This document shows positions 1-56,019 of a stretch of 64,000 bases of DNA, one piece after another. Source of the stretch: Malacoraja senta (lineage: Eukaryota). The stretch covers positions 124,001-188,000 of the forward strand of contig JAXLNO010005151.1 of the NCBI GenBank assembly GCA_038087875.1. The letters are read 5' to 3'. Position 1 is the stretch's first letter. Every line of letters begins with the position of its first letter. The translations under genes and the position numbers were made by a program. The notes beneath the pieces were generated by a model. It did no database searches and was not told the DNA's origin. It saw nothing but the letters and a program-made list of their open reading frames with translations.

Positions 1-152
1 TATAAAACGTCCACAATTATTATTCGGTATGTGCTTAAAGGTATTATCTGTGAGCGACTACTTTCAGTTGTGCCAAGTAATGATGGTACAGGACAGGGAC
101 TTTTTGATCTATTGATTGAAACATTACAGCATCTTAAAATTGACCCCCAAAA

Positions 153-1826: not shown

Positions 1827-2171
1827 AGTGGCCCAGCGCGAAAGCCCGACTGAAGCTTGAACTCAGGATTAGATGTAATTATATTTCATAACCTACGAAC
1901 TTATCTCCTATGACGTATTATAAGTTATTCATTCCACCTCTTTTTCTTTTTTGATATTGTAATTCTTCTTTCTCTCTTTTCTTTCTTCTTTCTCTCTATT
2001 TTTCTTTTTCTATCTATATAAAAAAAAAACACTAGAAGCAGAAATAACTGACAATTGACAAATTTAATAATGTATGAGTGATTGATGTATATGAAAAGTT
2101 TTTTCTTCTATTATAATATGTTACTCTACATTGTAATATGTTTGCTTCTAATAAAAATTTATATCACAAAA
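164..2171 (+). mobile_element. 5'-truncated L1-clade (L1/Tx1-like) LINE inserted into the hAT transposase
   Basis: 15-bp TSD AAAAATGTTTATCTG at 149-163 and 2172-2186; T-rich 3' UTR; AATAAA at 2150-2155 and a short A tail; uninterrupted ORF2 C-terminal part. Confidence 0.92.
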
Positions 2172-2275
2172 AAAAATGTTTATCTGATAGCACAGATGGC
2201 GCTGCAAGCTACTATGGCCAGTATAATGGTTTACAAAGTAAAATTGCTGATGTGGCTGATCAACATGTTCATATA

Positions 2276-2330
2276 CAATACAATACAATACGGTTTTATT
2301 CGTCACATTGCACATAAAGTGCAAGTGAAA
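2276..2330 (-). mobile_element. 55-bp LINE 3'-tail fragment inserted in the hAT CxxH-motif region
   Basis: Removing it restores CAT ATA TGG TGC TAT GCC CAT (HIWCYAH). The minus strand ends GTGACGAATAAAACC plus (GTATT)n, like other LINE tails in the window. Confidence 0.65.
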
Positions 2331-4020
2331 TGGTGCTATGCCCATGTCTTGAATTTGGTGATAACTGAAACAACAAATGTTGTGAGCCTGCAGTTTCTTT
2401 TTTCAATTTGCTCCAGAATAGAGCAACTTTTGTGAAAGCATCATACAAGAGAATGGCTGTATGGATAGAAGTTGTTGGAAAACATCTAGGATAAGAAAAA
2501 AATGAAACGATTAAAGCTAATTGGTGAGACCAGATGGTCAGGAAAATCCAATGCAGCAACAACTATATTTGGAAGTTTTGATGATGCCGCTGCCAGTACT
2601 TTCGTAAATCTATTGACATGATTATCAATGATACAAGATTCAGAAAAGTTTGATGCAAAAACAAAACATGAAGCAAATGTTTTACTTCAAAGTCTTCTAA
2701 AGTTTGAAACCATATTGACAGCATTTCTTTACTTGTATATATTTGAAACTACAACCCGTTATCAAGTTATCTACAGACAAGTGGGTTAGATATGTTTACT
2801 GCATGGAGTTTGGTAGATTCAGCTACAACAAAGTTGAAGGAACAGACAAGAACATTTAATAACGTTCACAGCAAGGCTTTGGAATTTGTAAAGAAATGTA
2901 ATGACAGGATTTCACAGATGAATATGGATGAAAATCAAACATTGGAAATTATTGCGTTGGAAACAGCATTGCCAGTTAAGAGGCAGAGGAAGAAGAAAAG
3001 AATGGCAGATGAGCTTATTGATGATAAAAGAAATTCCTCAGATTCTCTAGCTGATTTTTGAGTAAATGTGTTTAACCCAATAATGGATCGCATTGTCCAG
3101 TCACTAGAATCACGCTTTGTACAACACAAACAGTTGTATAAAGATTTGTCCTGCTTGGACCCAGCAAAGTTTAAAACTATTGCAGAGAAGGGCCTTGAAG
3201 ATGAAGCATTGGAAGGTATTATTAAGCTGTTTCCACAAATCAGCAAAGATCAAGTAATATTGGAATTGTTTTCTTTTGCTTCAAACTTTGATGTATTAAA
3301 GTTGCTTAATGATGGTGAGAATATGGATTCCAGTTGCAACAATTGTAAAATGTGCAGCACTTGCCCATCGAGTGTACTAAACATTCTGGCATCCAACAGA
3401 CTTCATGACAAGGCATATGATAACCTTTATCAACTTTATAAAGTCATCTGCACACTATCAGTTACTCAAGTCCAATGTGAGAGGACATTTTCAAAGCTAA
3501 AGATCATAAAGACAAGGTTAAGAAATTCGCTGTCTGAGGAGAATTTGGAATCATACATGTTGCTAACCATTGAAAAGGAATTGTTAGATGAATTGGATGC
3601 AGAAGCAATTATTGGCAGATTCGCACAATCATCTAGCGAACACAAACGATTGCTCTTAATATAGTGGACTGCATGCAATGCTCTATTGTGCTTTTCAACT
3701 ATCTGTTAATGTGTAAATTGTGCAGTAAATTATTTTAAAATATCAACCAATTACTTAAAATTAAAAAAAAAAAAAATTATAACATTCTGTATTTACATTC
3801 GGTATCTACTGCCAGTAATATGTACAGTACATGTACACTGTAATTACTAAGAACCATTTTTTTCACAAAAATTTTAAATTGTACCCTTTTTTCCATATGT
3901 ATTTTTTGAAAATATTATTTATTCGTTATGAAAATTAAATGATAGCATTGTAGTTGTGGGTGGGCCCCCTTTGTCTCCTGGCAACCAATATTTTTAGACC
4001 CAGTCCGCCACTGCTTGCGG

Positions 4021-4852
4021 CACTCCACTCGCCACTTACTGCCATTCTGAAAAGGACCCGTTCACTCCTACTCTTTGCTTCCGGTCTGCCAACCAATTTT
4101 CTATCCATGTCAACACCTTACCCCCAATACCATGAGCTCTAATTTTAGTCACCAGTGTCCCGTGCGGGACCTTATCAAATGCTTTCTGAAAGTCTAGATA
4201 CACTACATCCACTGGCACCCCTTCATCCATTTTACTTGTCACATCCTCAAAAAATTCCAGAAGATTAGTCAAGCATGATTTCCCTTTCATAAATCCATGT
4301 TGACGGACTAATCCTTTTACTGCTATCCAAATGCCCCATTATTACCTCTTTAATAATTGACTCCAGCATCTTTCCCACCACCGAAGTCAGGCTAACTGGT
4401 CTGTAATTCCCTGTTTTCTCTCTCGCTCCTTTCTTGAAAAGTGGTATAACATTAGCTATCCTCCAATCCACAGGAACTGATCCTGAATCTATTGAACATT
4501 GGAAAATGATCACCAATGCATCCACTATTTCTAGAGCCACCTCCCTGAGGACCCTGGGATGCAGACCATCAGGTCCAGGGGATTTATCATCCTTCAGTCC
4601 CATTAGCCTACCCAATACTATTTCTCGCCTAATGAAAATTTCTTTCAGTTCCTCTACCCCCTTAGATCCTCTGTCCTCCAGTACATCTGGGAGATTGTTT
4701 GTGTCTTCCTTAGTGAAGACAGATCCGAAGTACCTATTCAACTCTTCTGCCATTTCCTTGTTGCCCATAATAATTTCACCCGTGTCTGCCTTCAAGGGAC
4801 CCACATTTGACTTTGCTACTCTTTTTCCCTTAACATCTTTAAGCTTCTTTAC
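4021..4852 (-). mobile_element. CR1-clade LINE ORF2/RT fragment (frameshifted)
   Basis: ORFs 4265-4804 and 4036-4290: KSPGPDGLHPRVLRE, NYRPVSLTSVVGKMLE, KSCLTNLLEFFEDVT, DVVYLDFQKAFDKVPH. Confidence 0.9.
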
Positions 4853-5129
4853 TCAATACTCTGACTGATGAAGGACAAAGTGCCAAAATATTTTTTGACC
4901 ACCTAATATACCAGCGACTCAACCTTCAAGGAACCATGCAACCATCAACCATTCCTCTGCCCACCTGGCTAATTGATCGAGATCCTGCTGCAATCTTTCA
5001 CAACCATTTTCACTATTTGCAAATCCACTCACTTCTGTATCATCAGCAAACTTGCTAATCTTGCCCTGTTCTGTGACGTTTCACAGAGTGCTGGAGTAAC
5101 TGAGTGCTGGAGTAATATTGCGAGGTCAG

Positions 5130-5990
5130 GCTGAGTACAGAAGTTGGGAGGTCATGTTGCAGTTGTATAAGAAGTTGATGAGGCCGCATTTAGAGTATTG
5201 TATTCAGTTCTGGGCACCATGTAATAGGAAAGATGTCATTAAACTGGAAAGGGTACAGTGAAGATTTACGAGGATGTTGCCTCAGGACTAGAGGGCCAAG
5301 CTATAGGGAGAGGTTGAGTAGGCTGGTACTCTATTTCATGGAGCACAGGAGGATGAGGGATGATCTAATAGAGGTGTATAAAATCATGATTTGAATAGAT
5401 ATGGTTGAGTCTTTTGCGCAGAGTAGGTGAATCGGGGAGCAGAGGACATAAGTTCAAGGTGAAGGGCTAAATCTTTAATAGGAATCTGACAGGTATATTT
5501 TTCACACAAAGGGTGGTAGGTGTATGGAACAAGCTGCCAGAGGAGGTACAGACAGGGACTATCGCAAAATTTAAGAAACACTTAAACAGGTATATGGATA
5601 GGACATGTTCGGAGAGATATGGATCAAATGTGGACAGGACTAGTGTAGATGGGACATGCTGGGCCGAAGGGCCTGTTTCCACACTGTATCTCTCTATGAC
5701 TATCTATCTTTCCCTCTCAAACCCATTCTCCTGCCTTCTCCCCATTACCTCTGACACCTGTATCAATCAAGAATCTATCAATCTCCTCCTGAAAAGTGTC
5801 CATTGACTTGACCTCCACAGCTGTCTGTGGCAATGAATTCCACAGTTCACCACCTTCTGACTTAAGAAATTCCTGCTCATCTTCTTCCTAAAGGAATGTA
5901 TTTTAATTCTGAGGCTGTGGCCACTGGTCCTAGACTCTCCCACTAGTGGAAACATCCTCTCCACATCCACTCCATCCAGGTTTTTACCAG
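5130..5990. mobile_element. Two CR1-clade 3' fragments in opposite orientation (about 5130-5700 +, 5717-5990 -)
   Basis: Decayed RPHLEYCxQFWAP and VGVWNKLPEEV motifs with the family 3' tail GAAGGGCCTGTTTCCACACTGTAT. Confidence 0.75.
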
Positions 5991-6159
5991 GCTGGGACAG
6001 ACGGCAACAGCTTCACACCGTGTCCCAAAGCTTGTGTCCTGTCCTGCTTCACCCAGGCAGCAGAGACGTTATAGGAGAGGGCAAGCACCGTCACAAAGTA
6101 GCTCACGATGGTTTGGGTAACATTCAGGAATGTCTATGCATGTCACATCATCAATATAA

Positions 6160-6450
6160 CTGAAGAAGGGTCTTGACCCGAAATATAATCTATACCTTTT
6201 CTCCAGAGATGCTGCCTGACCCAGTGATTTGCTCCAGCACTCTGTGAAATGTCACCTATCCATGTTCTCCGCAGATGCTGCCTGACTCACTGAGTTACTC
6301 CAGCGCTCTGTGACATGTCACCTATCCATGTTCTCCAGAGATGCTGCCTGACCCACTGAGTTACTCCAGCACTCTGTGACATGTCACCTATCCATGTTCT
6401 CCACAGTTGCTGCCTGACCCGCTGAGTTACTCCAGCACTTTGTGTCTATT
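6160..6450 (+). repeat. Penelope-derived 3' end followed by about 4 tandem copies of a ~66-bp unit
   Basis: The unit GATGCTGCCTGACCCACTGAGTTACTCCAGCACTCTGTGACATGTCACCTATCCATGTTCTCC recurs with few substitutions. Confidence 0.8.
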
Positions 6451-7365
6451 TTCCCTTCAGCCATGTGCCCAAGCCCACTCTCCCCTCTCCTTTCCTATGT
6501 TCCTTTCCACCCATAAACCTATCTCTACCTTTACATTTCACTCCTCTTTCAAATCTGCTCTACTTATCTACATGCATTTTTCTTCTTAACTTTTTAGTCA
6601 TAGAATGATGCAGTGTGGAAACAGGCCCTTCAGCCCAACTTGCCCACACCGACCAACATGTCCCATCTAAACTAGTCCCACTCACACGCGTCTGGCCCAT
6701 ATCCATGTAAACCTCTCCTATCCATGTACGTGTCCAAATGTCTCTTAAACATTAGGATAGTCCCAGCCTTAACTACCTCCTCTGGCAGCTTGTTCCATAT
6801 ACCCACCACCCTTTGTGTGAAAAAGCTACCTCTCAGATTCCTGTTAATTTCTGAAATATTGGTCATGAATTTGATGCAAAAATGCTCCAAAATAAGGCTC
6901 AGAATGCATCAGAGAGCATCTAAAACCCCTGGACCCTGGCATCGAGGGACTTCACACTTCACGCTCGTGATGTGCACAGCGCGCACATTATTTCACATTA
7001 CAATCATGCACAGCGCGCACATTATTTCACATTACAATCTTTTTTGTGATCCTGTCATGCCACCCCCCTTTTTGAAAAGCTTCGTACGGGACTGAGTTGG
7101 GAAGGCATGTTGGTGCTTTACAGGTCATCAGCCACTGTGTAGCACTGGGAGATGGTACTGATGAGTACAGTTTAGTCCTGGCACAGCAGTGTGTACTGAT
7201 AGGGACAGATCTATCACTGCATAACAGAGAATGCTGGAGAAACTCAAGAGGTCAGGCAGCATCTGTGGAGGGAATGGACAGACAACATTTTTAGTTGGGA
7301 CTATTCTTCACACTGATTGTAGTATGGGGGAAGAAAGCTGGAAAAGAAAGCTGCCGTCCAAAAAC

Positions 7366-7905
7366 GAAAACTTGAATAAGCCCTTGATATAAGCCTGGCC
7401 GATTGTTTCACTGAACACCTTCACTCATTCCGCCTGGACCTACCTGATCTCCCGGTTCCCAAACACTTTACTTCCCCTTCCCATTCCCACACTGACCTTT
7501 CAGTCCTGGGCCTCCTCTTTTGTCAGAGTGAGGCCAAACGCAAATTAGAGGAACAGCATCTCATATTTCACTTGGGCAGCTTACAACCAGTGGTATGAAT
7601 ATTGAGTTCTCTGACTTCGTAATCCCTGCATTCCCTCTCTCTCCATCCCTCCCCCACCCAAGTCGTACCAGCTTCAAAGTCCCTTCTCACCTAACAAACA
7701 GCTAACAATGACCTGTTTTCTTTATCATCATTACTTTTGTGCAAATCTTTCATTGATTTGATCTATAGCTCTCTACATCACCGTCTATATCTCCCTTCCC
7801 TTTCCGCAGTCTGAAGAAGGGTCTCAAACCGAAATGTCACCTTTTCTCCAGAGATGCTATCTGACCAGGTGAGTTACTCCAGCTTTTTGTGTCTATCTTC
7901 AGTGT
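7366..7905 (+). mobile_element. Penelope-like element 3' fragment (decayed GIY-YIG C-terminus plus hammerhead-like motif at 7811-7838)
   Basis: Clearly homologous to the better-preserved copies at 23907, 49160 and 56020. Confidence 0.75.
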
Positions 7906-8659
7906 AAGCTATAGCTTGCAAAAGGGTGGTTAATAAATATTATGTGAATGCTGCAGTGGGATTAAACAATGTCGACAATTGATGCGTAACTGACAGGAAG
8001 CAAAACTTTTTGTAAAATATCTCCTTTGTTCTGGAGGTGCATAACAATGTTGTCACTGCCCCTGTAGCATCTGGTGCCCTCTTGTGGTCAAAGTTACAGT
8101 AATCTGGCGGTTGCTGTCCACAGATATTTTATTACAAATTTGGAACAACAAAATTGATGCTGAGTCTCATCCCGGAATGTCAATAATTTCCTCCCTCCCC
8201 ACAGATGCTGCTCGACCGCTGAGTTCCCCTAGGCTCCAGCAGTTTGTTTGTTGCTCCAGATTATGAGAGGCGTAGACAGTCAGAACCATTCACCAGTTTG
8301 GAAATGCTCAACTTTAGAGGCCAGAGCTAGAAAGTGAAAAGGGGAAGGTTTAATGGAGAAGTAGAGGGCATGTTTCTTTATACAGTGGGCGGGCGGGGGG
8401 GGGGTGGAACGCACTGTATGGGTGGTGGTAGTGCAGATATGATAGTAGGATTTAAGAGACTTTCAGATATGCACATGGAAGTGCGGGGAATAATAATGAA
8501 TTTTATTTATGGGCGCCTTATACCGAGGTCTCAAGGACACCTTACAGAGATTTATGGTTAACATATAATCAGAATTAAAAAAATAAGTTATAAAGGCCAA
8601 TACACAAATCAGGGACAGAATTCCTTCCAAAAACACAAAAAAGAAAATCAGACCATTTT

Positions 8660-8965
8660 GTTTAGTTTTAGAGATACAGCGCTGAAATAGTCCCTTCATC
8701 CTACTGAGTCCGCGCCGACCAGCGATCCCCATAAACCAGCACCATCCGACACAGGTGAGACAATTTACCATTGTTTTTACCGAAGGACAATAACTTACAA
8801 ACCTGTATGTCTTTGGAGTGTGGGAGGAAATCAGAGCTCCCGGAGAAATCCCATGTGATCACGGGGAGAACGTACAAACACCTTACTGACAGCACCCGTT
8901 GTCAGGATCGAACCCGGGTCTCTGGCGCTGTAAGACAGCAGCTCCACCGCTGCGCCATTGTGCCA
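8660..8965 (-). mobile_element. V-SINE (HE1-like) tRNA-derived SINE
   Basis: Minus strand: tRNA-like head GTGGCACAATGGCGCAGCGGTGGAG...GGTTCGATCC, V-core GGGAGCTCTGATTTCCTCCCACACTCCAAAGAC, CR1-derived tail ending in (CTAAA)n-like repeats. About 15 further copies, e.g. 15455-15770 +, 20580-20880 -, 22480-22770 -, 33850-34170 -, 47527-47837 +, 48440-48750 -, 52710-53000 +, 62495-62790 +. Confidence 0.8.
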
Positions 8966-11797
8966 CCCCTAAATATGTTCACTATTCTATTGCAGAATCT
9001 CCAATCTCTCCCTCAATGTCAGCAAGGTGAATTTGAAGGAGCTAGTTATCGACTGCTGGAAGGAAGATGGTGTACAAGCCATAAGCTTCTGGGATGCACC
9101 GCAGCGGCAGAAGCAAATGACCACGGATCGCCCCACGGAACCCAACACGAATCGACCAGGCGGCCGCCGAGAACGAAGATGGACTCGGCCGGTCGCCTGC
9201 AGCCATATGTGGCGGCAGGTTTGGTTCGCCGGTGTGAAGAGCAACCCGGTGGAAGCTGCTGAGCTTGGCCCCGAAACCCGGAGAGTCGTGGAGGAGGGAG
9301 CCGCTGCCGCCGACGGACGCAAGGAATGGGCCGCTAAGAGAGGGACTGAGGTATTACCTCCAGGAGAGGAGTTGCCTCCCGGGACACAGAGCCAGTTGGG
9401 CGAGGAGAGGGACGTCTGTTGGCTGGCCGAGCTGGTCGAGGGTGACGGAGGAGGCCCCCCTGGCAATAGCCTGGGGTTTAACTGAGCTTACGTGGATCGG
9501 GGGCGCCCCAGTAAATCCAACATACGGACCGGACATTGGACTTTTTCTTTTTCTTTTGTAAATACTGCCAAATTACGGCGACGGGAGCAAGAATTTCACT
9601 GTGCAGTGCATAAGTGACAATAAAGAATCATTGAAACATTGAAGTCAGAATCAATACTGTAGAAGTGCGAGTGCTGAAGTGGGAATGGTGAAGAACTTCA
9701 AATTCCTCGGCATGAACAACCTGTTGCATTTTAGTCACTGGGGCAGAACTTTTAAAAGAATGGACGTTTAACAATCCATCTGCAGCAATATAGAAACAGA
9801 GAAAGCAGGTGCAGGAGTAGAAAATTATGGCCTTCAAGCCAGCACCGTCATTCAATATGATCATGGCTGAGCATCCAGAATCAATACCCTGTTCCTGCTT
9901 TCTCCCCATATCCCTTGATTCTGTAGCCCTAAGATCTAACTCTCTCTTGAAGACATCGAGTGAATTGGCCTCCACTGCCTTCTGTGGCAGAGAATTCCAC
10001 AGATTCACAACTATCTGGGTGAAAGCGTTTTTCTTCATCTCATTCCTAAATGGCCTACCCTTTACTCGTAAACTGTGACTCCTGGTTCTGGACTCCCCCC
10101 AATATCGGGAACATTTTTCCTGCATCTAACTGTCCAATCCCTTAAGAATTTTATATGCGTCTATAAGATCCCATCTCATCCTAAATTCCAGTGAATATAA
10201 GCCCAGTCAGTCCATTCTTTCATCATATGTTAGTCCCGCCATACCGGGAAAAGAAATATTTTACTTTTTTATTGAACAATATCCTTGATTTTTTTGCTTT
10301 AAAAAAAAACATTCTGTTCCAGTCCCACCACAGAGATTTTTTGCTATATAATTCTTTGGCTCCTTTCCGCCTTCAATCAATTGAAAGCCAGAGTGGTAAA
10401 GACACTATTCATAGCATTGAGTATAAGAGTCAGGAAGTCATATGCTGCTTTATGGAACTTCAAAGATAGACACAAAATGCTGGAGTAACTCAGTGGGACA
10501 GGCAGCATCTCTGGATAGAAGGAATGGCTGACATTTCTGGTTGAGTCCCTTCAGGCTGAAGAGGAAAGGGAGACATGGAGATAAGGAAGTGTAAGGTATG
10601 AAAGAATGACATCAAATGAGATGTAGTTCAAGGAAAATGTAGAATAGATCATTATTAGCCAGGAGTAGGTGTGAACGAAGCATACATAGATAATTTTTAA
10701 TCAGGGGGACAGTCAGACTGGTCGGAGAATAGAACTTCAGATAGGCCACTTTTAGAATATTATCGGCATTTCTGGTTGCCCCAATGCAGGATGAATTTGG
10801 AAGCATGGAATTTGTGCAGAGGTGGTTTGCCAGAATGATGCACAGATTAGATATTAGCTGGAAGGAGAGGTTGGACAGACTTAGATTGTAATCGCTAGAA
10901 TGCTGGAGGTTGATAAAAGTATATAAAACTATGAGAGGCATAGATGGGATAGAGAGTCAGAATCTTTTCCACAGGGTGTAAATATAAAGTAATGGAGAGC
11001 ATAGTTTTCAGGTGAGTGGGACATGGTGTAAAGGGCCATGTATTAACAGAAGGCTCAATGAGAGATTTCTGCACTGATGTTGAGACTGAGCTGCACATTT
11101 ACACCTAGACACAACTTTAAACTGAGCTCATGTCTCTCCTCCCAGCTGAAAAAAAAGACGCATGGTATTACCTCAAATAAGGGCTGGGAAATTATTACAC
11201 ATGCATTGTCCAATTTTTATTACTTAAGCAATAACAGTAAAGTGGACTAAAGACAGACACAAAAATGTTAGATAGAGCTCTAGAGGCTGGTGGAATCAAG
11301 GGATATGGGGAGAAGGCAGGCATTGATTGGGGACGATCAGCCATGATCACCATGAATGGCAGTGCTGGCTCGAAGGGCCGAAGGGCCTCCTCATGCACCT
11401 ATTTTCTATGCTTATAAAAAGATGGAGTAACTCAGCAGGTCAGGCAGCACTTCTGGGAAAAAGGAAAAGGTGACGATTTGTGTTGAGACCCTTCCCGAAA
11501 TGTCACCTATTCCTTTCCCCCAGAAATGCTGCCTGACCCGCTGAGTTACTCCAGCTTTTTGCATCTGCCTACAGTAAAACAAGCATCTGCAGTTCCTTCC
11601 TACACAGTAAAGTAGACTTCTGGTTTATCTAACACTGCAGTTTGTGGAATTGACTGCATTCTGAATTGTAAAATCATTATACTTTGAGAAACATCTATTC
11701 GGCTGTAAGATGCTATGTGAAATATGATTTTGTAATTGTTGTCCTTAAAACACCAATATAATCCCTACCATAAAACCCAATCCGTAAACTGTATTCA

Positions 11798-11905
11798 CTG
11801 GTAATTAGTGACGAGAACAAGTGGTCTCATTCCCATTGGATCTGGTTATCAGGTTTGTGTATACATGGACCAATAATTACCTTCACACCAGAGTTCTGTT
11901 AAAAA
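11798..11905 (+). promoter_or_regulatory. Putative MHC class I proximal promoter: X1-X2 (CTGGTAATTAG-TGACG), inverted CCAAT/Y box (ATTGG), forward CCAAT, TATA-like TTAAAA
   Basis: TGACG at 11809-11813; CTCATTCCCATTGG with ATTGG at 11835-11839 (21-nt spacer); CCAAT at 11870-11874; TTAAAAA at 11899-11905. It lies in unique, non-repeat sequence directly upstream of the leader exon. Confidence 0.6.
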
Positions 11906-11977
11906 CGTACAAGAGATTATGTTACTGTTGCTGCATTTACTCTGCTGGTTAAATAGTGCTGTGGGCGGCTGTTAAAC

Positions 11978-12029
11978 ATGCTTCTTTTTACCTTACTGAA
12001 CACTTACGGTGTGGCCACTGTCTCCTCTG
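11978..12029 (+). CDS. MHC class I-like exon 1 (leader peptide MLLFTLLNTYGVATVSS)
   Basis: ATG at 11978, 17 codons plus 1 nt, donor G|GTAAGC at 12030; the phase-1 join gives ...VSS-DLHHL. Confidence 0.75.
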
Positions 12030-12332
12030 GTAAGCAATACTGCTTCAACCTGTGAACTTTGAGGAAACAACAAAACTGATTATATTTACTGTTGCACAGT
12101 GCCTGTGTTTGCCCTGGGTTCATTGTCTTGGATGTATTAATTGAATGATTGAATTGAATGTATTAATAATTTTGGGTAACGGTCTTTCCTTAGTTGTAAA
12201 GGCTCCTGTGGGAAGTTATATATACTATGGTTACCTTGGCAATCCATTGAACAGAAGAACTGAATACATGTAAATAATGAACATAGAACATAGTACAATA
12301 CAGCACAGGAGCAGGTCCTTCAGTCCTTCAGT

Positions 12333-12360
12333 CTGAAGAAGGGTCTCGACCCGAAACGTC
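12333..12360 (+). ncRNA. Minimal type I hammerhead-ribozyme motif of Penelope-like element type (best-preserved copy)
   Basis: CTGAAGA-A-GGGT(CTCG)ACCC-GAAAC-GTC: CUGANGA and GAAA core boxes, 4-bp stem II, palindromic ACGT in place of stem III, GUC triplet. Stem I is only about 2 bp. Confidence 0.6.
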
Positions 12361-15300
12361 ACCCGTTCCTTTTCTCCAGAGATGCTGCCTGACCCGCTGT
12401 TACCTCAGCATTTTGTCTACCTTCGGCCCACAATGTCTGTGCCGAACAAACTAAACTAATCTCCTCTACCTGTATGTGATCTGTATCCGGCCATTCCCTG
12501 CCTATCTATGTACCTATCTAAAAGCCTCTGAAATGTAACTGTTATATCTGCCACCATCACCACAACCACCACTGGCAGCGCGTTACAGATGTCCACCACC
12601 CTCCACATAAAACAACTTGCTCCGCTCATCTCCTTTGAACATTGCCTCTCCAACCTTAAAGTGATGTTCTCTGGTCTTCAACATTTCCACCCTGGGAAAA
12701 AGGTTCTGGCTGTCCACTCTGTCTGTGCCTCTCACCATGTTGTGCACTTTCATCAGGTCTCCCTTCAACCTCCAGTATACAAGAGAAAACAATCCATGTT
12801 TGTCCAATCTGTCCTTGCACTAATGCCTCAGACAGAATTCAGGTGATGTGCACTTTCAATAAAGAAGTGACTTCTGCATTAGTAGGTGTTCCACCTCTCC
12901 AAGATTTCCTCAGCTGGTGTTAGACACCCACATGATGGTAAAATTCAGCCTGCATTAAATGACCAATCAATGTTGTGTTAATGTTTTTGCCATCTTGTTG
13001 TTTGTTGCATGCTTCCTGTCCTGCAGACCCTATCCATTACCCCATCACCACTTCCCCAGAAGACGATAATGAGATTTAAGAAGCTTGAGGATAGGCACGT
13101 GGATATGCAGGGAATTGAGGGATATGAATCATCTACAAGCATGAAGAGTTTAGTTGAACTTGACATCATGTTCGGCACAGACATTGTGGCCGAACTCCAG
13201 CCCATTACACCCTTAATGAACAAAAATCTATCAATCTCAATCTGGAAATTTTCAAGTGGGCAACATATTCAACAGATTACAGAATCGAGAACCAGAGGAC
13301 ATAGGTTTACATTGAGGGGGGAAATATTGAATGGGAATCTGATGAGCAATTTCTTCCCACACAATGGTACCTTTCTAACTATTCTGACATTCATCAAGGC
13401 TTGGAGATTACAAACCTACTCGTCCTGAAAGTTTCATCCCATTGTTATCAAATGAAAGTAAATATAATGGTGTTAAAGAAGGAACTGCAGATGCTGGAAA
13501 ATCGAAGGTACACAAAAATGCTGGAGAAAGTCAGCGGGTGCAGCAGCATCTATGGAGCGAAGGAAATAGGCAACGTTTCGGGCCGAAACCATATAATGGT
13601 GATGGCCATGTTGAAATAATAACATATAAAACAAAAATCCTCGGCTGTGGAGTGTTTTGGGAAGCCACATGGATTTTATCGTTACTGTATTCCACTCTTA
13701 GCCGTCTTATGTTTCTCCTGGTAACACTGAAACAGACACTTCTAACTCTGCCCTCGGGGCCCCTTCTCACTTCACTTAAACACATGAACTTTGACACTGT
13801 CTGGTGTGCTGCATGTAATCTTTATCACAGAACAAATACTGCTTATGCATGTGGAAACAAGAAACTGCACATGCTGGTTAATACACATAAAATACTGGAG
13901 TAATTCAGCAGGTCAGGCAGTATGTCTGGAGAACATGGTTAGGTGATGTTTCAGTTGACACAAGTGTAGGAAGGAAGTGCAGATGTGTAAGAAGGAACTG
14001 CAGAAGCTGATTTAAACCGAAGATAGACAATAAAGCTGGAGTAACTCAGCGGCACAGGCAGCATCCCTAGAGAGAAGGTATGGGTGACGTTTCGGGTCGA
14101 GACCCTTCTTCTGACTGCTGATGCAGATGCTGGTTTACACCGAAGATAGCTACAAAAGGCTGGAGTAACTCAGCAAGTCAGGCAGCATCGCTGGAGAAAA
14201 GGAATAGGTGGAGTTTCAGGTCAAGACACTGCATCAGACAGAGTCGGGGGTGCATATATTTCATTGTACTTTGTCATATCTCTCGGTTCTCTGTCCCCTG
14301 ACTCTCATTCTGAAGAAGGGTCTCGACACGAAACGTCACCTTTTCCTTTTCTCCGGAGATGCTGCCTGACCCACTGAGTTACTCCAGTATTTTGTGTCGA
14401 GTTTCAATTTAGGCCCTGTTTATCTCAGTCTCCACCACCCCCCCCCCCCCCATCTCTATGAGCTGTGTTGCAGCTGCCTATGAGGACCTGGACTCAATCC
14501 TGATCTCTTACAACCTGGCTTTTTTTTCCCCCTGCAAACGTGTGTTTGCTATGGTTATTCCAGTTTCCCCGCACGTCCCCAAAATGCCGGGCTGAAAGGT
14601 AAATTGGCCAGTGTGAATTGGTCATGCATATGTATTAGAATTGGTGGAGGGGATGAGGGAGGTGTTAATGGGAGATTGGCAAATATTAAAAGGGTTAGCG
14701 TACCACAGGTATAAATAGGTGTTTGATGGTCACCACGAACTTGGTGGGCTAAAGGGCCTTTTATGTGCTGTACCCAGTGAACATAAGTTTAAGATGAGGG
14801 GGGAATGATTTAATAGGAACCTGAGGCATAGCATTGTTACACAAAGGGTGGTGGGTGTACTGAATGAACTGCCGGAGAAGGTAGTTCAGGCGCGTACTGT
14901 CACGACATTTAAGAATCATTTAATCAGGTACATGGATAGGATAGGCTTATAAGGATATGGGCCTCAGTCAGCTGTAGAGCCCACATCAATGGATATTTCT
15001 CAGGTGGAGATTAACAGATTCTTGATCAGTATGGGTTTCAAGGGTTATGGGGTGCAGGCAGGAGAATGTGGTTGATAGGGAGAGATAGCTCAGCCATGAT
15101 TGAATGGCCGATGGGCTGAATGGCCTAATTATTCTCCTAGAACTTATGTACTGATGAAATACAGGTAGTGTAGATGAGGCATGTTGGTTGGTGTGGCAAG
15201 TTGAGCCATAGGCCCTGATTCCCTGCTGTATGACTCTTTGACTTTACCTCTCTATGATTCTATAAAGTCTCCTTGACATTGTCGTTTCTTAATATAATAA

Positions 15301-15961
15301 AATATTCTTCAAATTTTGGAATATTGTAACTAGTAGAACCTATCGACATGATAGACAATAATAGATCTTTGAAGATGGGAAACAATCCAGTAGGATCATT
15401 CAATACCTCGACCATAATTGGTGGAGTAGGTATCAGAGCCCATCATGCCAACTCTTGAAGAAGGCTCAGTGGTGCAGCGGTAGACTTACTCGATTACAGC
15501 ACCATAGACCCAGGTTGGATCCTGATTACGGATGCTGTCTGTACGGAGTTTGTCCATTCTCCCCATTACCGTGTGGGTTTTTCCCGAGATGTTCGGATTC
15601 TTCCCACATTCCAAAGACGTATAGGTTTGTAGGTTAATTGGCTTGGTCTAGAATGTAAATTGTCCCTAGTGTGTGTAGGATAGTGTTATTGTGTGGGGGT
15701 TGCTGGTCAGTGTGGACTCGCACGAAGGGCCTGTTTCCATGCTGTATCTCTAAGCTAAAAACTAAACTAAAGGCTCCTGACCCAAATTGTCACCTGATCA
15801 TTGATGCTGCCTGCCCCACTGAGTTCATCCAGCACTTGCATCTGCAGGTCCTTGTGACTCCCTTATTCAAAGTTATTGTATTGTTATCAGTTTTAGCATT
15901 AATAACTTAGTTATTTTCAGTGAATGATACAATCATACTTATTTTTGTTTATGCATTGCAG

Positions 15962-16222
15962 ATTTACACCATCTTGCATTTTACTACCTGTTGAACCATG
16001 GATTGAATGAGCTGCCTGAGTACAGTATGGTAGCAATGCTGGATGACGTCCAGATAGCATATTTTGACAGCACACTAGAGCGGGCTGTTCCCAGACAGCG
16101 ATGGATGGCCCAGTCTTTCCCGCATGATCACTGGGATTCAATGGCCATCACAGTTGCAGGTTTTCATGGGATTGTCAGAGGAAATGCTGAGATAGTCTAC
16201 CAACAGCAACATGGTATCTCGA
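15962..16222 (+). CDS. MHC class I-like exon 2 (alpha1 domain)
   Basis: Acceptor TTGCAG at 15956-15961, donor GTAAGT at 16223. Reads (D)LHHLAFYYLLNHGLNELPEYSMVAMLDDVQIAYFDSTLERAVPRQRWMAQSFPHDHWDSMAITVAGFHGIVRGNAEIVYQQQHGIS, matching the class I H3, LDD, FDS, PR..W and WD pattern. Confidence 0.92.
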
Positions 16223-17997
16223 GTAAGTGTCGTGAGCGGACCTGGGGTAGACACTCAGTGATGACACAGATGGATTTTGTTTTAGTTTTATTGTTGACAC
16301 ATGATTCTCTGATACACTTTTTTTGCGTTAGTCAATCACATCAAAGAAAACTATTCATAAATACAATCAAACCAAACTCGTACAATAGGTAGAGCAAAGA
16401 GTGCAGAATGTAGTTCTCAGCATTGTAATGTACCAGTGCCAGAGACAAAGTCCAGTGTCTACAATGGGGTTGAGGTGAACCCTAGCATAAGGGAGGACTG
16501 TTCAGAAACCTGATAACATAGGGGAGGAAACAGTTACTGAGTCTGGTGGTGCACGCTTTAATGCTTACGTACCTTCTGCAGGAAGAAGGAGTGACCAGAA
16601 CGGGACAAATCTTTGATTATGTTGTCTGCTTTCCTGAACCAGTTGAAATACAGATGGATTCACTGGTGGGGAATCATGTTTGTGTGATCGACTGTGCTAC
16701 ATCTCCACCTCTCTGCAATTTCCAGCGGTCTTGGGCAGAACTCTTTCCAAACTAAGTTGTGATGCAACCTGTCAGTATGCTTTCTATGGCACATTTGTAG
16801 AAGTTTGTAAGAGTCATTGGAGATGCCGCATTTCCTTAGTCTCCTGAGGCAGTAGGGGAACCAGAAACTCTCAACCTTTTTCACTTCAGCACCATTGATG
16901 CTGTTTCAGACATTTACTCCATAACATTTTGATAGAGACACGGCCCATCGTCTATATTTAATGTGTCCTAACTGCTGAACACACAGTCATAACAGTTGGC
17001 TGGTGATAGTCTCTTTATGGGTTAAGCATTTGATATTCAACACCAGTAATAAGTGGATGGATTGGATCATCTGTTTTGTTGGGCTGGAATGAGGGAGAAA
17101 CCATTAGTTTATTTATAGCCTGATCATCTAGAGATGGGATCTTGATTTAAGCTGGTTGATGGTGACTATGAGGTATTCCCTCAGTAATAATATTGTGTTA
17201 ATCCAGCATCCCCTCAATATTGGCAACAATCCTCAGAGGGTGTAGCAATCCCACACAGTGCAACAGCCTTGATGTACTTCCCATCTGCATTGCCTTAACC
17301 TTCAGACTGACCTGTTGGCTCTGTAGCATTGCCCATCTGACAATGCACTTCTTCCTCTGTTCTTTATGTACGACAGTGCAGAATCTGAGTTCCACCCTTC
17401 TGACACAGCAGAACTCCTTTAGTGTTACATCCGCAACAGTAAAGCTCCCCCCATAACACTTGAGGTTAGTCCATGCCCTCAGTATATAGACCATGGGTCA
17501 TTGAGTCACACAGCATGGAAACCGGCCCTTCTGCTCACTGAATCCACATTGATCATCCATTGTGCTAAGATGGAGTCACAGCAAACTGCAGATGCTGCCA
17601 ATCTGAATTTAAAACAAACAGGAGGAACTCAACGAGTCAGGCAGCATGCTGTGGAAAAATGGACAGAAAACATATGAGACCAGTGTAGCGGCACCAAACG
17701 TGGTGAATAAAGAGGAGACCTGTCAGGCCGGTTCAAACAGTTGTTTATTCAAGGGTCGACACGTTAGGTTGGTGCGCTAACTATTATTAATGTTGTTGCT
17801 GAAGCTGAGCGAGGTTGTTCCCTCGGGCTCAGCTACCGGTTGAAGACCTGGTGGTCTCGAGGTGAGATGACCTTATGTACCAGGACACTCCCTCTAGCCC
17901 ATGACGTCACGTGCCCGCCCTCGTACTTCCTGACGAGGGTTCGAGCATAAGTGGCCCGTGTATAGGCTGCCGCCACAGGACCCCCCCCAGAACCAGA

Positions 17998-18309
17998 GGA
18001 AGGAATAGCATAGTCGAGGGCGGCTTCTGCATGTGGGTCTGGGACACCCCGGGCGTGGGTCGGGACGGAGGGCCCACGGGCGCAGTAACGCTCTGCGTGG
18101 GCGATCCCGAGGTACCGAGGGGTGCGAGGGGACCGATGCAGAAACCGCCGGACGGAAGGAATAGCATGGTCGAGGGCGGCTACTGCATGTGGGTCTGGGA
18201 CACCCCGGGCGTGGGTCGGGACGGAGGGCCCACGGGCGCAGTAACGCTCTGCGTGGGCGATCCCGAGGTACCGAGGGGTGCGAGGGGACCGATGCAGTAA
18301 CCGCCGGAC
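17998..18309. repeat. 2 x 156-bp tandem duplication inside the LTR element
   Basis: GGAAGGAATAGCAT at 17998 and 18154; GACCGATGCA at 18131 and 18287. Confidence 0.9.
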
Positions 18310-18650
18310 AGAAGAGACACAGTCGCATCTCCTCGACCAGCTAAGGGAGAGTGTCCTGTAAAATGCGGCCCCCATGAATGGCTGGGAGACGTCGTCATCT
18401 TTGAGGGAAAACAAAACCCGAAATAAAATAAACAAACTAATTGCTGAACTCAGCGTGGTGCGTGGTGATGCAGTGAACACAAAATGAACAGAAAAAAAAC
18501 CCCCCACAAATTACAGTGCAATCAGTGCAAGTTCAAATTGTCCAATGTTCATAGTGCAGGATTTGAAAGCTGTGCAGCGTTGCAGTGACAGCCTCCGACC
18601 TGACAGTGGCGCTGTTGCCGGTAGTCAGGATGCAGGGACGACATCCAGCT

Positions 18651-18779
18651 GGAAGGTGGCGCTGTGGACGGCGGTGAGGCTGCAGTGACGGCATCCGGGC
18701 GGAAGGTGGCGCTGTGGATGGCGGTGAGGCTGCAGTGACGGCATCCGGGCGGAAGGTGGCGCTGTGGATGGCGGTCAGG
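18651..18779. repeat. About 2.5 x 50-bp GC-rich tandem repeat inside the LTR element
   Basis: GGAAGGTGGCGCTGTGGA at 18651, 18701 and 18751. Confidence 0.85.
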
Positions 18780-20205
18780 TGAGTTCGCTTTTCTCAGCGG
18801 CCATTTTAGTTGTAGTTTGTTCGGCCGCTTGTTCGGGAGGCCGCGGCGGCCATTTTGCCGGCCGGCTGAGGCGGCCTTCACCAGCAATTGAATCCCTGGG
18901 CCGGACAGGCAGACAGCCAGCGCCCAGGGATCTTCGGAGTCCACGCCGGTGAGGAGAAAAAGGCCGACTTCGGCAGGCGCCCCAGGTAAGACCGCCCTAT
19001 CGGGTGGCCAGGCCCTCGGCAGCGGCCGGCGGGGCCAGGTGCGGTGCAGGACGTGGAGCCGTTGCTGCGGTGAGGCCCTTTGCAGTGCTGGGTCCGCGAT
19101 GAGGTGAGGCCGGGGCACGGCCTGGAGCGGAGAGGCCCGGTGCAGTGCAGGGCCTGGAGCCATGTTCGCGGTGTGAGGCCGGGCCCTGGTCCGTTGTCGG
19201 GAGTGGGAGAGCGGCAGGTACTCTCTCCGCTCCAGGGGCCGTCGGGTTTGCTGTGGGCAGGAGGCTGCTACGCTCGCAGCTCCTGCAGCAGCTGGTGGGG
19301 CAACGGGGGCAGGTAAAACCTCTCCACTGCGGTAGTCGGCTCCGGGCAGGTCATGCGGGGGAGCTCGGTGGCCGTCACACAAGGCGGCCTGCCCCGTTGC
19401 CGGGAGCGGGAGAGCGGCGGCAGCCGTGGCTTCTTAGCTCCGGTGAGCAGCAGCTGGTGGGGAAGCGGCGGCATCCCAGATGTAGCGGCATACATTACCG
19501 CAGGGCCGGGTTGGCGGCAGCGTAGTTCTGCAGGGCTGGGCAGTCGGCTGCAGACATCAGGTCTCCCGAGGCTGCGAGCTTCAGGAGAAATCCAAATTTC
19601 AATTTGGACAGTCGGGGGTCACCAGTGTAGCGGCACCAAACGTGGTGAATAAAGAGGAGACCTGTCAGGCCGGTTCAAACAGTTGTTTATTCAAGGGTCG
19701 ACACGTTAGGTTGGTGCGCTAACTATTATTAATGTTGTTGCTGAAGCTGAGCGAGGTTGTTCCCTCGGGCTCAGCTACCGGTTGAACACCTGGTGGTATC
19801 GAGGTGAGATGACCTTATGTACCAGGACACTCCCTCTAGCCCATGACGTCACGTGCCCGCCCTCATACTTCCTGACGAGGGTTCGAGCATAAGTGGCCCG
19901 TGTATAGGCTGCCGCCACACCAGGACCATTTAGAGTGATGGGGTAGAGTGGAGAAAGCTGGAAAAGAAAAGTAGTCTGTGTAGGATAGTGTTAATATGCG
20001 GGGACCACTGGTCGGTGCGGACTCGGTGGGCCGAAGGGCCTGTTTCCGCGCTGTATCTCTGAGCTAAACCTGCTCCTGTGCTGTACAGCTCCATGTTGTG
20101 TTCTGTTATGCCTGTTTGTACCATGCTGAGAACTGATTTGTAAATTGCCTCTCCCTTCCATCCACTCTCCCCAACACAAATCCTCCACCCCTACCTCAGC
20201 CCCAG

Positions 20206-20480
20206 CTGTTTGCTTTGTGCAGGGTTTCTGCGGCTGTGAAGTGGACAGTGACAATTCCACTGATGGGTTTGTCAGACTGGGTTATGATGGGGAGGATGCC
20301 TGTGCTTTTGACAAGGACAGAATGCGCTGGATTGCACTACGTCCAGATTTCCAGATGCTAGCAGATCGGTGGAACGTCAACACCTTCATGACAAGTATTT
20401 TAAAGATCTCCTGGAGAAGGACTGTGTGAAGTGGCTGCGGATATATCTGGAGTGTGGACAAGAAGCACTACAGAGGAGAG
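20206..20480 (+). CDS. MHC class I-like exon 3 (alpha2 domain), one nucleotide short with a frameshift near 20391
   Basis: Acceptor CCCCAG| (an in-frame alternative exists at 20200), donor AG|GTACAC at 20481. Reads (T)VCFVQGFCGCEVDSDNSTDGFVRLGYDGEDACAFDKDRMRWIALRPDFQMLADRWNVNTFM, then in the shifted frame KYFKDLLEKDCVKWLRIYLECGQEALQRR. Confidence 0.92.
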
Positions 20481-21759: not shown

Positions 21760-22032
21760 AAACCCCTGAGGTGTTTATTGGGATTAAACGTGATGGGTCG
21801 CAATCACTGAGACTCTCCTGCCTTGTCACAGGCTTCTAGCCACGGGCCATCGATGTAACGTGGCTGAGAGATGGTGAGGGGGTCCATGAGTCTGAATCCA
21901 GTGATCTGTTGCCCAATTGGGATGGGACTTACCAGCTGAAGAATACAATTCAACTGAATAGAGAAGATGTGGCAAAATTCTCCTGTTACATCGAACATGC
22001 AACTCTGCTGCAGGGAGTCAATGTTCCACAGG
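21760..22032 (+). CDS. MHC class I-like exon 4 (alpha3 Ig-C1 domain) with in-frame TAG at 21837-21839
   Basis: Acceptor TTGCAG|, donor G|GTAAGT at 22033. Reads (E)TPEVFIGIKRDGSQSLRLSCLVTGF*PRAIDVTWLRDGEGVHESESSDLLPNWDGTYQLKNTIQLNREDVAKFSCYIEHATLLQGVNVPQ. Missed by the ORF track because of the stop. Confidence 0.93.
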
Positions 22033-28102: not shown

Positions 28103-29112
28103 TCAATACTTTGTAGAACCACCTTTCGCTGCAATTACAGCTGCAAGTCTTTTGGGGTATATCTCTACCAGCTTTGCACATCTAGAGACTGAAATTTTTG
28201 CCCATTCTTCTTTGCAAAATAGCTCAAGCTCAGTCAGATTGGATGGAGAGCATCTGTGAACAGCAATTTTCAAGTCTTGCCAGAGATTCTCAATTGGATT
28301 TAGGTCTGGACTTTGACTGGGCCATTCTAACACATGAATACGCTTTGATCTAAACCATTCCATTGTAGCTCTAGGGTCGTTGTCCTGCTGGAAGGTGAAC
28401 TTCCACCCCGGTCTCAAGTCTTTTGCAGACTCTAACAGGTTTTCTTCCAAGATTGCCCTGTATTTGGCTCCATCCATCTTCCCCCATCAACTCTGACCAG
28501 CTTCCCTGTCCCTGCTGAAGAAAAGCATCCCCACAGCATAATGCTGCCACCACCATGTTTCACAGTGGGGATGGTGTGTTCAGGGTGATGTGCAGTGTTA
28601 GGTTTCCGCCACACATAGCGTTTTGCATTTAGGCCAAAAACTTCAATTTTGGTCTCATCTGACCAGAGCACCTTCCTCCACATGTTTGCTGTGTCCCCCA
28701 CATGGCTTGTGGCAAACTGCAAACGGGACTTCTTATGGGCTTTTTTCAACAATGGCTTTCTTCTTGCCACTCTTCCATAAAGGCCCGATTTGTGGAGTGC
28801 ACGACTAATAGTTTTCCTGTGGACAGATTCTCCCACCTGAGCTGTGGATCTCTGCAGCTCCTGCAGAGTTACCATGGGCCTCTTGGCTGCTTCTCTGATC
28901 AATGCTCTCCTTGCCCGGCCTGTCAGTTTAGGTGGACGGCCATGTCTTGGTAGGTTTGCAGTTGTGCCATACTCTTTCCATTTTCGGATGATGGATTGAA
29001 CAGTGCTCCGTGAGATGTTCAAAGCTTGGGATATTTATTTATAACCTAACCCTGTTTTAAACTTCTCCACAACTTTATCCCTGACCTGTCTGGTGTGTTC
29101 CTTTGGCTTCAT
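28103..29112 (-). pseudogene. Tc1 DD34E-type transposase, disrupted
   Basis: MKPKEHTRQVRDKVVEKF...GYK*ISQALNIS (stop at codon 26), GRPPK, WSDE, KHGGGSIMLWGCF, frameshift near 28477, then FQQDNDP-RATMEW. The second D to E spacing is 30 rather than 34, i.e. a 12-nt deletion. Ends SPDLNPIE...AKGGSTKY. Confidence 0.92.
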
Positions 29113-29853: not shown

Positions 29854-30074
29854 AGAGGGCAGTGAAAGAAGATATGAAGATTAGGATCGTGACTGGAGCT
29901 GTAATTGTTCCTCTCATTCTCCTGGGGATCATCCTTGGAATTGGTTGCTGGAAGAAGAGGAAAAAGAGAAAACCTTTCAATGAACAGGTACCAGCTGACA
30001 ACAGCAGAGACCAGGAGAGGACCATGAAGCACAATCAGCTTCCTTTGGGATGCAGAGGAGGTCTACCGGAATGA
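29854..30074 (+). CDS. MHC class I-like connecting peptide/transmembrane/cytoplasmic exon (3' boundary uncertain)
   Basis: Acceptor CCAACAG| in phase 1. Reads (E)RAVKEDMKIRIVTGAVIVPLILLGIILGIGCWKKRKKRKPFNEQ..., a hydrophobic stretch followed by a basic stop-transfer cluster. Possible donors at 29988 or 30061; otherwise it reads to TGA at 30072-30074 at the edge of a CR1 fragment. Confidence 0.8.
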
Positions 30075-55699: not shown

Positions 55700-55751
55700 A
55701 TGATTCTGTTCATCTTGTTGAGTTTCTTCCGCGTACAAGGGGCTCAAGCAG
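55700..55751 (+). CDS. Candidate leader exon of a second gene (MILFILLSFFRVQGAQA), probably another class I paralog
   Basis: ATG plus 17 codons plus 1 nt, strong donor CAG|GTAAGT at 55752, signal-peptide-like with an AQA cleavage site. Same length and phase as the leader at 11978; lies in non-repeat sequence. Confidence 0.55.
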
Positions 55752-56019
55752 GTAAGTTAATGATTCTCATTTTATTCACTACTGGCTAAAAGCGTCTTGG
55801 CTTTATCTCAATCTTGACCGGAGGCGACTGAGTTTAAAAAAGCGCGCAATACACATTCAGTCTGATTCATGGTTCATGCGGACGGACGTTAAAAGGGTTT
55901 AATCTCCACTGTTTCAGTACAATCCAGACTGGAATTTCTGCTTTGATTTGCACAATGCCCCGTTTCCTTTGTGGAAGAAGGAACTACAGATATTGGTTTA
56001 AACTGATTTTAACTCGTGT

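What the first reader, a model, noticed from the sequence alone, without database searches (positions are those of the whole stretch)
15962..20480. Highly divergent non-classical class I groove: peptide anchors lost, groove-facing residues hydrophobic
Seen, using a by-eye alignment to HLA-A2 numbering: Y7F, Y59H, Y/R84Q, Y123A, T143L, K146R, Y159L; only W147 and Y171 are kept and the N86 glycan site is absent (H). Groove positions are mostly hydrophobic (F7, Y9, M24, M63, V67, F70, I73, V74, V81, V95, C99, V114, L116, L143, L159). The C101-C164 bond and beta2m-contact motifs (Q96, D119-G120, D122, P235, D238-G239) remain. Established: cartilaginous fish have classical UAA plus non-classical lineages (UBA, UCA, UDA, UEA, UFA), some proposed to bind hydrophobic ligands. 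Inference: a beta2m-binding, probably non-peptide (lipid-like) presenting lineage; whether it is a known or a new lineage cannot be told here.
Basis: partly seen in the sequence, partly recalled or inferred. Interest (0 to 1): 0.72.

Follow-up and report, generated by a model that had tools for sequence, protein, structure and literature searches.

The report
Broken skate UGA-sister class I gene
This is a real non-classical MHC class I gene of a skate, from an old shark-and-ray lineage with a greasy groove that lacks the peptide anchors and sits next to the lipid-binding-type gene UGA, but this copy is disabled by a one-base deletion and a stop codon.

Summary
Exons alpha1 (15962-16213) and alpha2 (20200-20480) encode a class I groove with F7, H59, Q84, A123, L143, R146, L159. 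W147 and Y171 are kept, and there is no N86 sequon.

These substitutions are not decay. The same residues occur in all 12 relatives found in sharks, rays and skates, including an intact-looking little-skate copy that is 92% identical.

The lineage forms its own clade (100/99) and is sister to UGA (99/97; PDB 9ch4). It is distinct from UFA (8gm8), from classical-type genes and from CD1. About 29 of 46 groove positions are hydrophobic and only 3-5 are charged. I found no published name for it; NCBI labels its members "MR1-like".

This copy is broken twice:
- A one-base deletion after 20390 leads to a stop at 20427.
- TAC has become TAG at 21837-21839 in alpha3.

Both lesions are unique to this copy. 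It shows no excess amino-acid change, so the inactivation is recent, or less likely an assembly error.

Lipid-type binding remains an inference. The scan has already reported this lineage, intact and broken, on other pieces of this genome.

The parts
15962..16213 (+). Alpha1 exon, open reading frame, phase 1 at both ends
   Evidence: AG at 15960-61 and GT at 16214-15. It is 93% identical in protein to P0001 and 96.8% identical in DNA to L001.
20200..20480 (+). Alpha2 exon, 281 nt where the relatives have 282
   Evidence: AG at 20198-99 and GT at 20481-82. Aligned with L001 and L002. Pfam MHC_I E 1.4e-08.
20390..20391 (+). Lesion 1: one A is missing between these bases (codon AAC of Asn in the relatives). 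The shifted frame ends at TGA 20427-20429.
   Evidence: Three-way DNA alignment, pairwise alignment, ORF end at 20429. Neither L001 nor L002 has this deletion.
21760..22032 (+). Alpha3 (C1-set Ig) exon
   Evidence: tblastn with P0001 gives 87% identity. Splice sites TTGCAG| and |GTAAGT.
21837..21839 (+). Lesion 2: TAG stop in place of TAC (the Tyr of the invariant GFYP motif)
   Evidence: L001 and L002 both have TAC. F-Y-P is invariant in the protein alignment.
29854..30071 (+). Connecting peptide, transmembrane and cytoplasmic exon with its stop codon; the frame is open
   Evidence: tblastn and translation. There is no tyrosine or dileucine sorting motif.
17679..19919 (.). A 2.2-kb GC-rich insertion in the alpha1-alpha2 intron, bounded by 299-nt direct repeats that are 99% identical. 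It is absent from the little-skate locus.
   Evidence: the repeat finder. L001 joins window 17683 directly to window 19919.
55700..55751 (+). Leader exon of the neighbouring UGA-type gene (MILFILLSFFRVQGAQAG, then GTAAGT). The rest of that gene is not in the window.
   Evidence: tblastn with skate UGA proteins P0154, P0156 and P0157.

Best explanation
The stretch is the groove-coding part of a four-exon-visible gene: alpha1, alpha2, alpha3 and a transmembrane/tail exon. I did not find the leader exon.

The gene belongs to a single- or low-copy non-classical MHC class I lineage found in sharks, rays and skates. That lineage is the sister of UGA, and in skates it lies just upstream of a UGA gene.

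Intact members would give a membrane-anchored heavy chain that pairs with beta2-microglobulin. The groove is lined mostly by hydrophobic side chains with very few charges. The most likely cargo is therefore a hydrophobic non-peptide or lipid-modified ligand shown to T cells or NK-type receptors. This is inferred, not shown.

This particular copy is a recently disabled duplicate or orthologue. A one-base deletion in alpha2 ends translation 12 codons later, before the Cys164 partner of the groove disulfide. A second, independent stop sits in alpha3. No functional heavy chain can be made from it as assembled.
For: Identity and anatomy:
- Exons and splice sites.
- Alpha1 matches P0001, a Leucoraja erinacea protein (XP_055486430.1), at E 8e-46.
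- The window is collinear with that locus over about 25 kb at 87-92% DNA identity.

Lineage:
- Eleven further relatives at 54-72% identity come from Pristis, Mobula, Hypanus, Pristiophorus, Heptranchias, Scyliorhinus, Stegostoma, Hemiscyllium, Mustelus, Cetorhinus and Chiloscyllium. Below them identity drops to 34%.
- In the careful IQ-TREE the lineage clade has support 100/99 and is sister to the UGA clade at 99/97, with batoids and sharks separated inside it (quick tree).
- The PDB titles identify 9ch4 as UGA and 8gm8 as UFA.

Groove:
- The anchor pattern F7 H59 Q84 A123 L143 R146 L159 is identical in every member that covers those positions.
- 28-31 of 46 groove positions are hydrophobic and 3-5 are charged. 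UGA has 21-25 and 5-6. The other class I sequences compared have 18-27 and 6-13.
- An AF2 model of the Pristis member has pLDDT 89. Its best solved match is UGA (Z 29.1, TM 0.89-0.92).

Disabled state:
- Both lesions are absent from L001 and L002.
- One of them is a base substitution, which is an unlikely assembly error.
- The window copy departs from no residue that is invariant in the other members.
- It has 8 derived amino-acid changes against 9 in the intact copy.
- dN/dS against L001 is 0.58, with dS 0.060 and non-coding divergence 0.079. The inactivation is therefore recent.
Against: - An assembly error at the one-base deletion cannot be excluded.
- No leader exon was found.
- No ligand, beta2m pairing or expression was tested.
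- Groove positions are not more conserved than the rest of alpha1-alpha2 (24/46 against 48/104 invariant, p = 0.6). Conservation therefore does not single out the groove.
- The nearest folds are class I type, not CD1.
- The tail lacks the endosomal YxxPhi motif that skate UGA carries. This weakens a strict CD1-like reading.
Confidence: 0.8

Rival explanations
1. The gene is functional and the two lesions are assembly errors, or belong to one defective haplotype while the other allele is intact.
For: - The copy has no change at any residue that is invariant in the lineage.
- It shows no excess of derived substitutions.
- All splice sites and the transmembrane exon are intact.
- The deletion lies in a two-base A run.
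Against: - There are two independent lesions, and one is a C-to-G substitution.
- Skates clearly carry dead copies of this gene: L002 has its own stop at Cys164 and a lost donor.
- Earlier scan notes report several other broken copies in this genome. I did not check those notes.
Confidence: 0.13
2. The anchor losses and hydrophobic residues are random decay that followed pseudogenisation of a classical-type gene.
For: The copy is broken.
Against: - The same residues are fixed in all relatives across sharks and batoids.
- The gene is nested in its own clade, far from the classical-type sequences.
- The window copy has about as many derived changes as the intact copy.
Confidence: 0.01
3. Intact members of the lineage do not present lipids. 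They might bind lipopeptides or small hydrophobic molecules in a class I-type groove, as chicken YF1*7.1 or MR1 do. Or they might act without any ligand as a receptor ligand, as HFE, MIC and TL do.
For: - After UGA, the nearest solved folds are chicken BF2 and YF1*7.1, which presents N-acylated amino acids. MR1 follows; no CD1 appears in the top 50.
- No endosomal sorting motif is present in any member's tail.
- An invariant extra Cys99 sits on the groove floor.
Against: - MR1's Schiff-base Lys43 aligns with Ala in this lineage (alignment).
- The sister lineage UGA is reported to bind CD1d-type lipids (PMC12562908, read).
- The very low charge count in the groove fits acyl chains.
Confidence: 0.3

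Closest known systems
UGA, shark non-classical MHC class I (PDB 9ch4; skate members XP_032898133.1 and XP_055521885.1)
   Same: - It is the sister clade (99/97) and the best structural match (Z 29.1).
- It is adjacent in the genome, both in this window and on the little-skate scaffold.
- It shares A123, L159, Y171, W147, the GFHG-KG stretch of alpha1 and the NKYFK-LLEKDC stretch of alpha2.
   Different: - Identity is only about 38%.
- UGA keeps Y7, Y59, K146 and the N86 sequon, and has F99 and F143.
- Its groove is less hydrophobic (21-25 of 46).
- Skate UGA has a YQNI tail motif that this lineage lacks.
UFA, shark non-classical MHC class I (PDB 8gm8)
   Same: - It is MHC-linked, non-classical and found in both sharks and rays.
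- It joins the UGA plus this-lineage pair in the quick tree (91).
- Its alpha1 has a similar MLDDLQ..DS..PRQQWMA stretch.
   Different: - It is a separate long-branch clade.
- Its alpha2 is very different.
- Its C-terminus has no cytoplasmic tail.
- P0001 matches 8gm8 only at E 3e-32, against 3e-60 for 9ch4.
MR1 (the name NCBI gives these genes)
   Same: Class I fold, with good HMM and Foldseek scores.
   Different: - There is no orthology in the trees.
- The ligand-capturing Lys43 aligns with Ala.
- MR1 is not reported in cartilaginous fish (table in PMC12562908).
CD1
   Same: A hydrophobic groove without peptide anchors. The related UFA and UGA are described as CD1-like lipid binders (PMC10751288 and PMC12562908).
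   Different: - The one CD1 sequence in the tree is distant.
- No CD1 structure appears among the top 50 structural matches.
- There is no tyrosine sorting motif.
Classical UAA and peptide-binding UDA of cartilaginous fish
   Same: The same domain plan, the C101-C164 disulfide and the beta2m-contact motifs.
   Different: Of the nine anchor positions checked, only W147 and Y171 are kept. UDA is described as keeping eight of nine; that is my own recollection of Almeida et al. 2020, a paper that is not held.

Membership tests
MHC class I superfamily | Alpha1-alpha2 groove domain followed by a C1-set Ig domain and a transmembrane segment, on separate phase-1 exons | tested here: met
   Pfam MHC_I matches on the exon translations. 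MHC_I plus C1-set on the orthologue. Exon structure. AF2 model with Z 26-29 to class I chains.
Classical class I (UAA type) | The invariant peptide-terminus anchors Y7, Y59, Y/R84, T143, K146, W147, Y159, Y171 | tested here: not met
   The residues are F7, H59, Q84, L143, R146, W147, L159, Y171, so only two are kept. This holds for the window and for all relatives.
UGA | Falls inside the clade that holds the 9ch4-type sequences | tested here: not met
   It forms a separate clade with 100/99 support and is the sister of UGA, not a member. Identity to 9ch4 is 38%.
UFA | Falls inside the clade that holds the 8gm8-type sequences, and has a tail-less C-terminus | tested here: not met
   It is a separate clade. 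8gm8 is titled UFA. This gene has a transmembrane segment and a 40-residue tail.
UEA / UCA | A multigene family reported in sharks only, with a hydrophobic groove (my recollection of Almeida et al. 2021; the paper is not held) | not testable with these tools
   No labelled UEA or UCA sequence was available. This lineage is present in batoids and has one or two models per species, which does not fit that description.
MR1 | Orthology to MR1 and the Schiff-base Lys43 in the groove | tested here: not met
   Lys43 aligns with Ala. Identity is about 31%.
CD1 | Clusters with CD1, has a deep two-pocket lipid groove and a YxxPhi tail motif | tested here: inconclusive
   The one CD1 sequence is distant in the tree. 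No CD1 appears in the top 50 folds. No YxxPhi motif is present. Groove volume could not be measured.
Processed or unitary pseudogene | Disabling lesions in an otherwise recognisable gene | tested here: met
   A one-base deletion after 20390 and a TAG at 21837-21839. Introns are kept, so it is not a processed copy. The lesions were not confirmed in reads.

The most novel reading that the evidence does not exclude
The UGA-sister lineage would be a third, still unnamed, ancient ligand-presenting class I family of elasmobranchs, with chemistry of its own. It has the most hydrophobic and least charged groove of the set. It carries an invariant free cysteine at floor position 99, seen in none of the other class I sequences compared here, which might capture a ligand covalently much as MR1 uses Lys43. 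It also has no endosomal sorting motif. In skates it would be undergoing birth-and-death duplication, with this window as one of the dead copies.
Probability: 0.1. Interest if true: 0.7.

Novelty: new member of a known kind. Interest (0 to 1): 0.3.

Why it matters
The copy in this window is dead, so it matters mainly as a marker in two ways.

That lineage stands beside the lipid-binding-type genes UGA and UFA. Cartilaginous fish therefore had at least three related non-peptide-type class I lineages early on, which bears on how old lipid or small-molecule presentation is.

Second, skates have duplicated this otherwise single-copy gene and lost copies again. The intact members, not this one, are the ones worth expressing and solving.

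Tried and rejected
Neither the lesions nor expression could be checked, and read laying was not usable.
- Naming the lineage from the literature failed.
  - The two Almeida papers are not held.
  - The supplement of PMC10751288 labels genes only as MHC-Ib.
  - Four further text searches found no paper on UFA or UGA beyond a review.
- Leader exon: tblastn with the shark leaders and a signal-peptide-plus-donor scan of 1-15960 gave nothing credible.
- Species: an exact look-up of a 557-aa window ORF found no record. I can only say the genome is a skate close to Leucoraja erinacea. I cannot say whether the window is a paralogue or an orthologue of L001.
- The TGA after the alpha2 donor looked like a third lesion, because two gene models (P0001, P0170) read through it. 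I rejected this, since ten other models splice at the canonical site and the site is intact here.
- A groove that is more conserved than the rest of the domain: not supported (p = 0.6).
Full report
**What is there**

On the + strand the window carries four exons of an MHC class I-type gene:
- alpha1, 15962-16213
- alpha2, 20200-20480
- alpha3, 21760-22032
- a connecting-peptide, transmembrane and tail exon, 29854-30071

All four have canonical AG/GT boundaries and the phase-1 junctions usual for class I genes. The exon translations match Pfam MHC_I. Alpha1 alone matches a 359-residue class I protein of the little skate at E 8e-46: P0001, XP_055486430.1, named 'MR1-like, partial'. I found no leader exon.

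**The observation**

I aligned the gene with a classical-type reference that keeps all eight peptide-terminus anchors. The window gene reads F7, H59, Q84, A123, L143, R146, W147, L159, Y171 and has no N86 sequon. C101, C164, Q96, YDGED and PNWDG are present.

**The lesions**

A three-way DNA alignment with two little-skate loci shows one A missing after 20390. The relatives have ATGAAC where the window has ATG-AC. The shifted frame stops at 20427-20429, upstream of Cys164.

In alpha3 the Tyr codon of the invariant GFYP motif is TAG at 21837-21839. Both little-skate loci have TAC.

A TGA just past the alpha2 donor is intronic. Two gene models read through that site, but ten others splice at ...LQRR|, and that donor is intact here.

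**What lineage it is**

A full-length search with P0001 found one or two models per species in Pristis, Mobula, Hypanus, Pristiophorus, Heptranchias, Scyliorhinus, Stegostoma, Hemiscyllium, Mustelus, Cetorhinus and Chiloscyllium. Identity is 54-72%, then falls sharply to 34%.

A careful IQ-TREE of 51 sequences gave these results (a quick tree of 90 rows agrees):
- The window and these proteins form one clade (100/99).
- Batoids and sharks separate inside it.
- The clade is sister (99/97) to the clade of skate and sawshark proteins that resemble PDB 9ch4.

Foldseek on an AF2 model of the Pristis member (pLDDT 89.4) returns 9ch4 first. Its title reads 'shark nonclassical MHC class I, UGA'. A model of the basking-shark protein P0019 returns 8gm8 first, titled '...UFA'.

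The gene is therefore neither UGA nor UFA. It is UGA's sister. It is also UGA's neighbour. A UGA-type leader exon lies at 55700-55751 in the window. On the little-skate scaffold the two genes carry consecutive accessions.

Papers that I could read name UAA, UBA, UDA, UEA, UFA and UGA. They describe UFA and UGA as CD1-like lipid binders (PMC10751288; PMC12562908). None names this lineage. The primary UDA and UEA papers are not held. From memory, UDA keeps eight of nine anchors and UEA is a shark-only multigene family. Neither description fits.

**Decay or design**

The anchor pattern is identical in all members that cover those positions. The one exception is W147L in the three orectolobiform sharks.

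Across 46 groove positions, the counts are as follows:

| Group | Hydrophobic | Charged |
|---|---|---|
| This lineage | 28-31 | 3-5 |
| UGA | 21-25 | 5-6 |
| Other class I sequences compared | 18-27 | 6-13 |

The window copy differs from no residue that is invariant in the other members. It has 8 derived changes against 9 in the intact little-skate copy. Its branch is as short as that copy's (0.050 against 0.048).

Against the little-skate locus, dS is 0.060, dN is 0.035 (ratio 0.58), and non-coding divergence is 0.079. The odd groove is therefore inherited and selected, and the inactivation is recent.

Groove positions are not more conserved than the rest of alpha1-alpha2 (24/46 against 48/104 invariant, p = 0.6). 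This does not support the 'unusually conserved groove' wording of earlier scan notes.

**How it most likely works**

Shown:
- the fold
- the domain plan
- the loss of peptide-end clamps
- the greasy lining of the groove
- kinship and linkage to UGA

Inferred: intact members pair with beta2m and carry a hydrophobic, non-peptide or lipid-modified ligand.

Several points caution against a strict CD1 analogy:
- After UGA, the nearest solved folds are chicken BF2 and the acyl-amino-acid presenter YF1*7.1. No CD1 appears in the top 50.
- No member has a YxxPhi or dileucine tail motif, while skate UGA has YQNI.
- MR1's Lys43 aligns with Ala.
- An extra cysteine at floor position 99 is invariant in the lineage and absent from the other sequences compared. 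Its meaning is unknown.

As assembled, this copy would give at most a 160-residue fragment, and probably a transcript subject to decay.

**Context and limits**

The window is collinear with little-skate scaffold JAMYXN010000384.1 at 87-92% identity. It also resembles a second, clearly dead little-skate copy on JAMYXN010000412.1, which has a stop at Cys164, a lost donor and no alpha1 exon. Skates have therefore duplicated this gene and lost copies.

I could not tell whether the window is a paralogue in the same species or an orthologue in another skate.

Earlier notes of this scan report the same lineage, both intact and broken, on other pieces of this genome. My tree and the PDB titles independently reach the same placement.

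**Verdict**

The lineage-level reading is reasonable but untested at the ligand level. This copy is an ordinary recent pseudogene of a lineage that is already in public annotations and has already been seen by this scan.

Noticed in passing
window 17679-19919: A 2.2-kb GC-rich insertion in the alpha1-alpha2 intron. It is bounded by 299-nt direct repeats that are 99% identical and holds internal 156-nt and 50-nt tandem repeats. It is absent from the little-skate locus, which joins the flanks directly. It looks like a young LTR-type non-autonomous element.
   Followed up: partly
window 55679-55753: A UGA-type leader exon. The first ATG is followed at once by TGA, where the skate UGA proteins have Arg. 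The second ATG, at 55700, opens a normal signal peptide that ends at a GTAAGT donor. The rest of that gene is not in the window.
   Followed up: partly
L002 (JAMYXN010000412.1) 11707-14226: A second little-skate copy of the same lineage is clearly dead. Its Cys164 codon is TGA, the alpha2 donor is GC, there is a 3-nt deletion in alpha3 and no alpha1 exon was found. Even so, NCBI models a 263-aa protein from it (XP entry behind P0177).
   Followed up: partly
P0001 and P0170 gene models; L001 10252-10263 and 12983-13021: The public models of the little-skate and zebra-shark genes use non-canonical junctions and so carry extra residues: GILTP in P0001, and a 13- to 16-residue linker before alpha3 in both. 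The canonical sites are intact in the little-skate DNA, so P0001's extras are probably annotation artefacts; the zebra-shark DNA was not examined.
   Followed up: yes
alpha2 codon 99 (window about 20223-20225) and all lineage members: The lineage has an invariant Cys at groove-floor position 99 (a CGC motif with Cys101), which none of the other class I sequences compared here has. It also has a conserved N-S-T sequon in the alpha2 loop in place of the usual N86 site.
   Followed up: partly
window 3068-3664, 28432-29022, 49072-49917: Transposon remains: a hAT dimerisation domain, a Tc1/mariner transposase HTH domain in the 7.8-kb alpha3-to-transmembrane intron, and a weak GIY-YIG (Penelope-type) match. 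A 557-aa ORF at 153-1826 has no Pfam match.
   Followed up: no
skate UGA proteins P0154 and P0156, cytoplasmic tail: Skate UGA tails carry YQNI, a YxxPhi endosomal sorting motif like that of CD1. The sawshark UGA models and all members of this lineage lack it.
   Followed up: no
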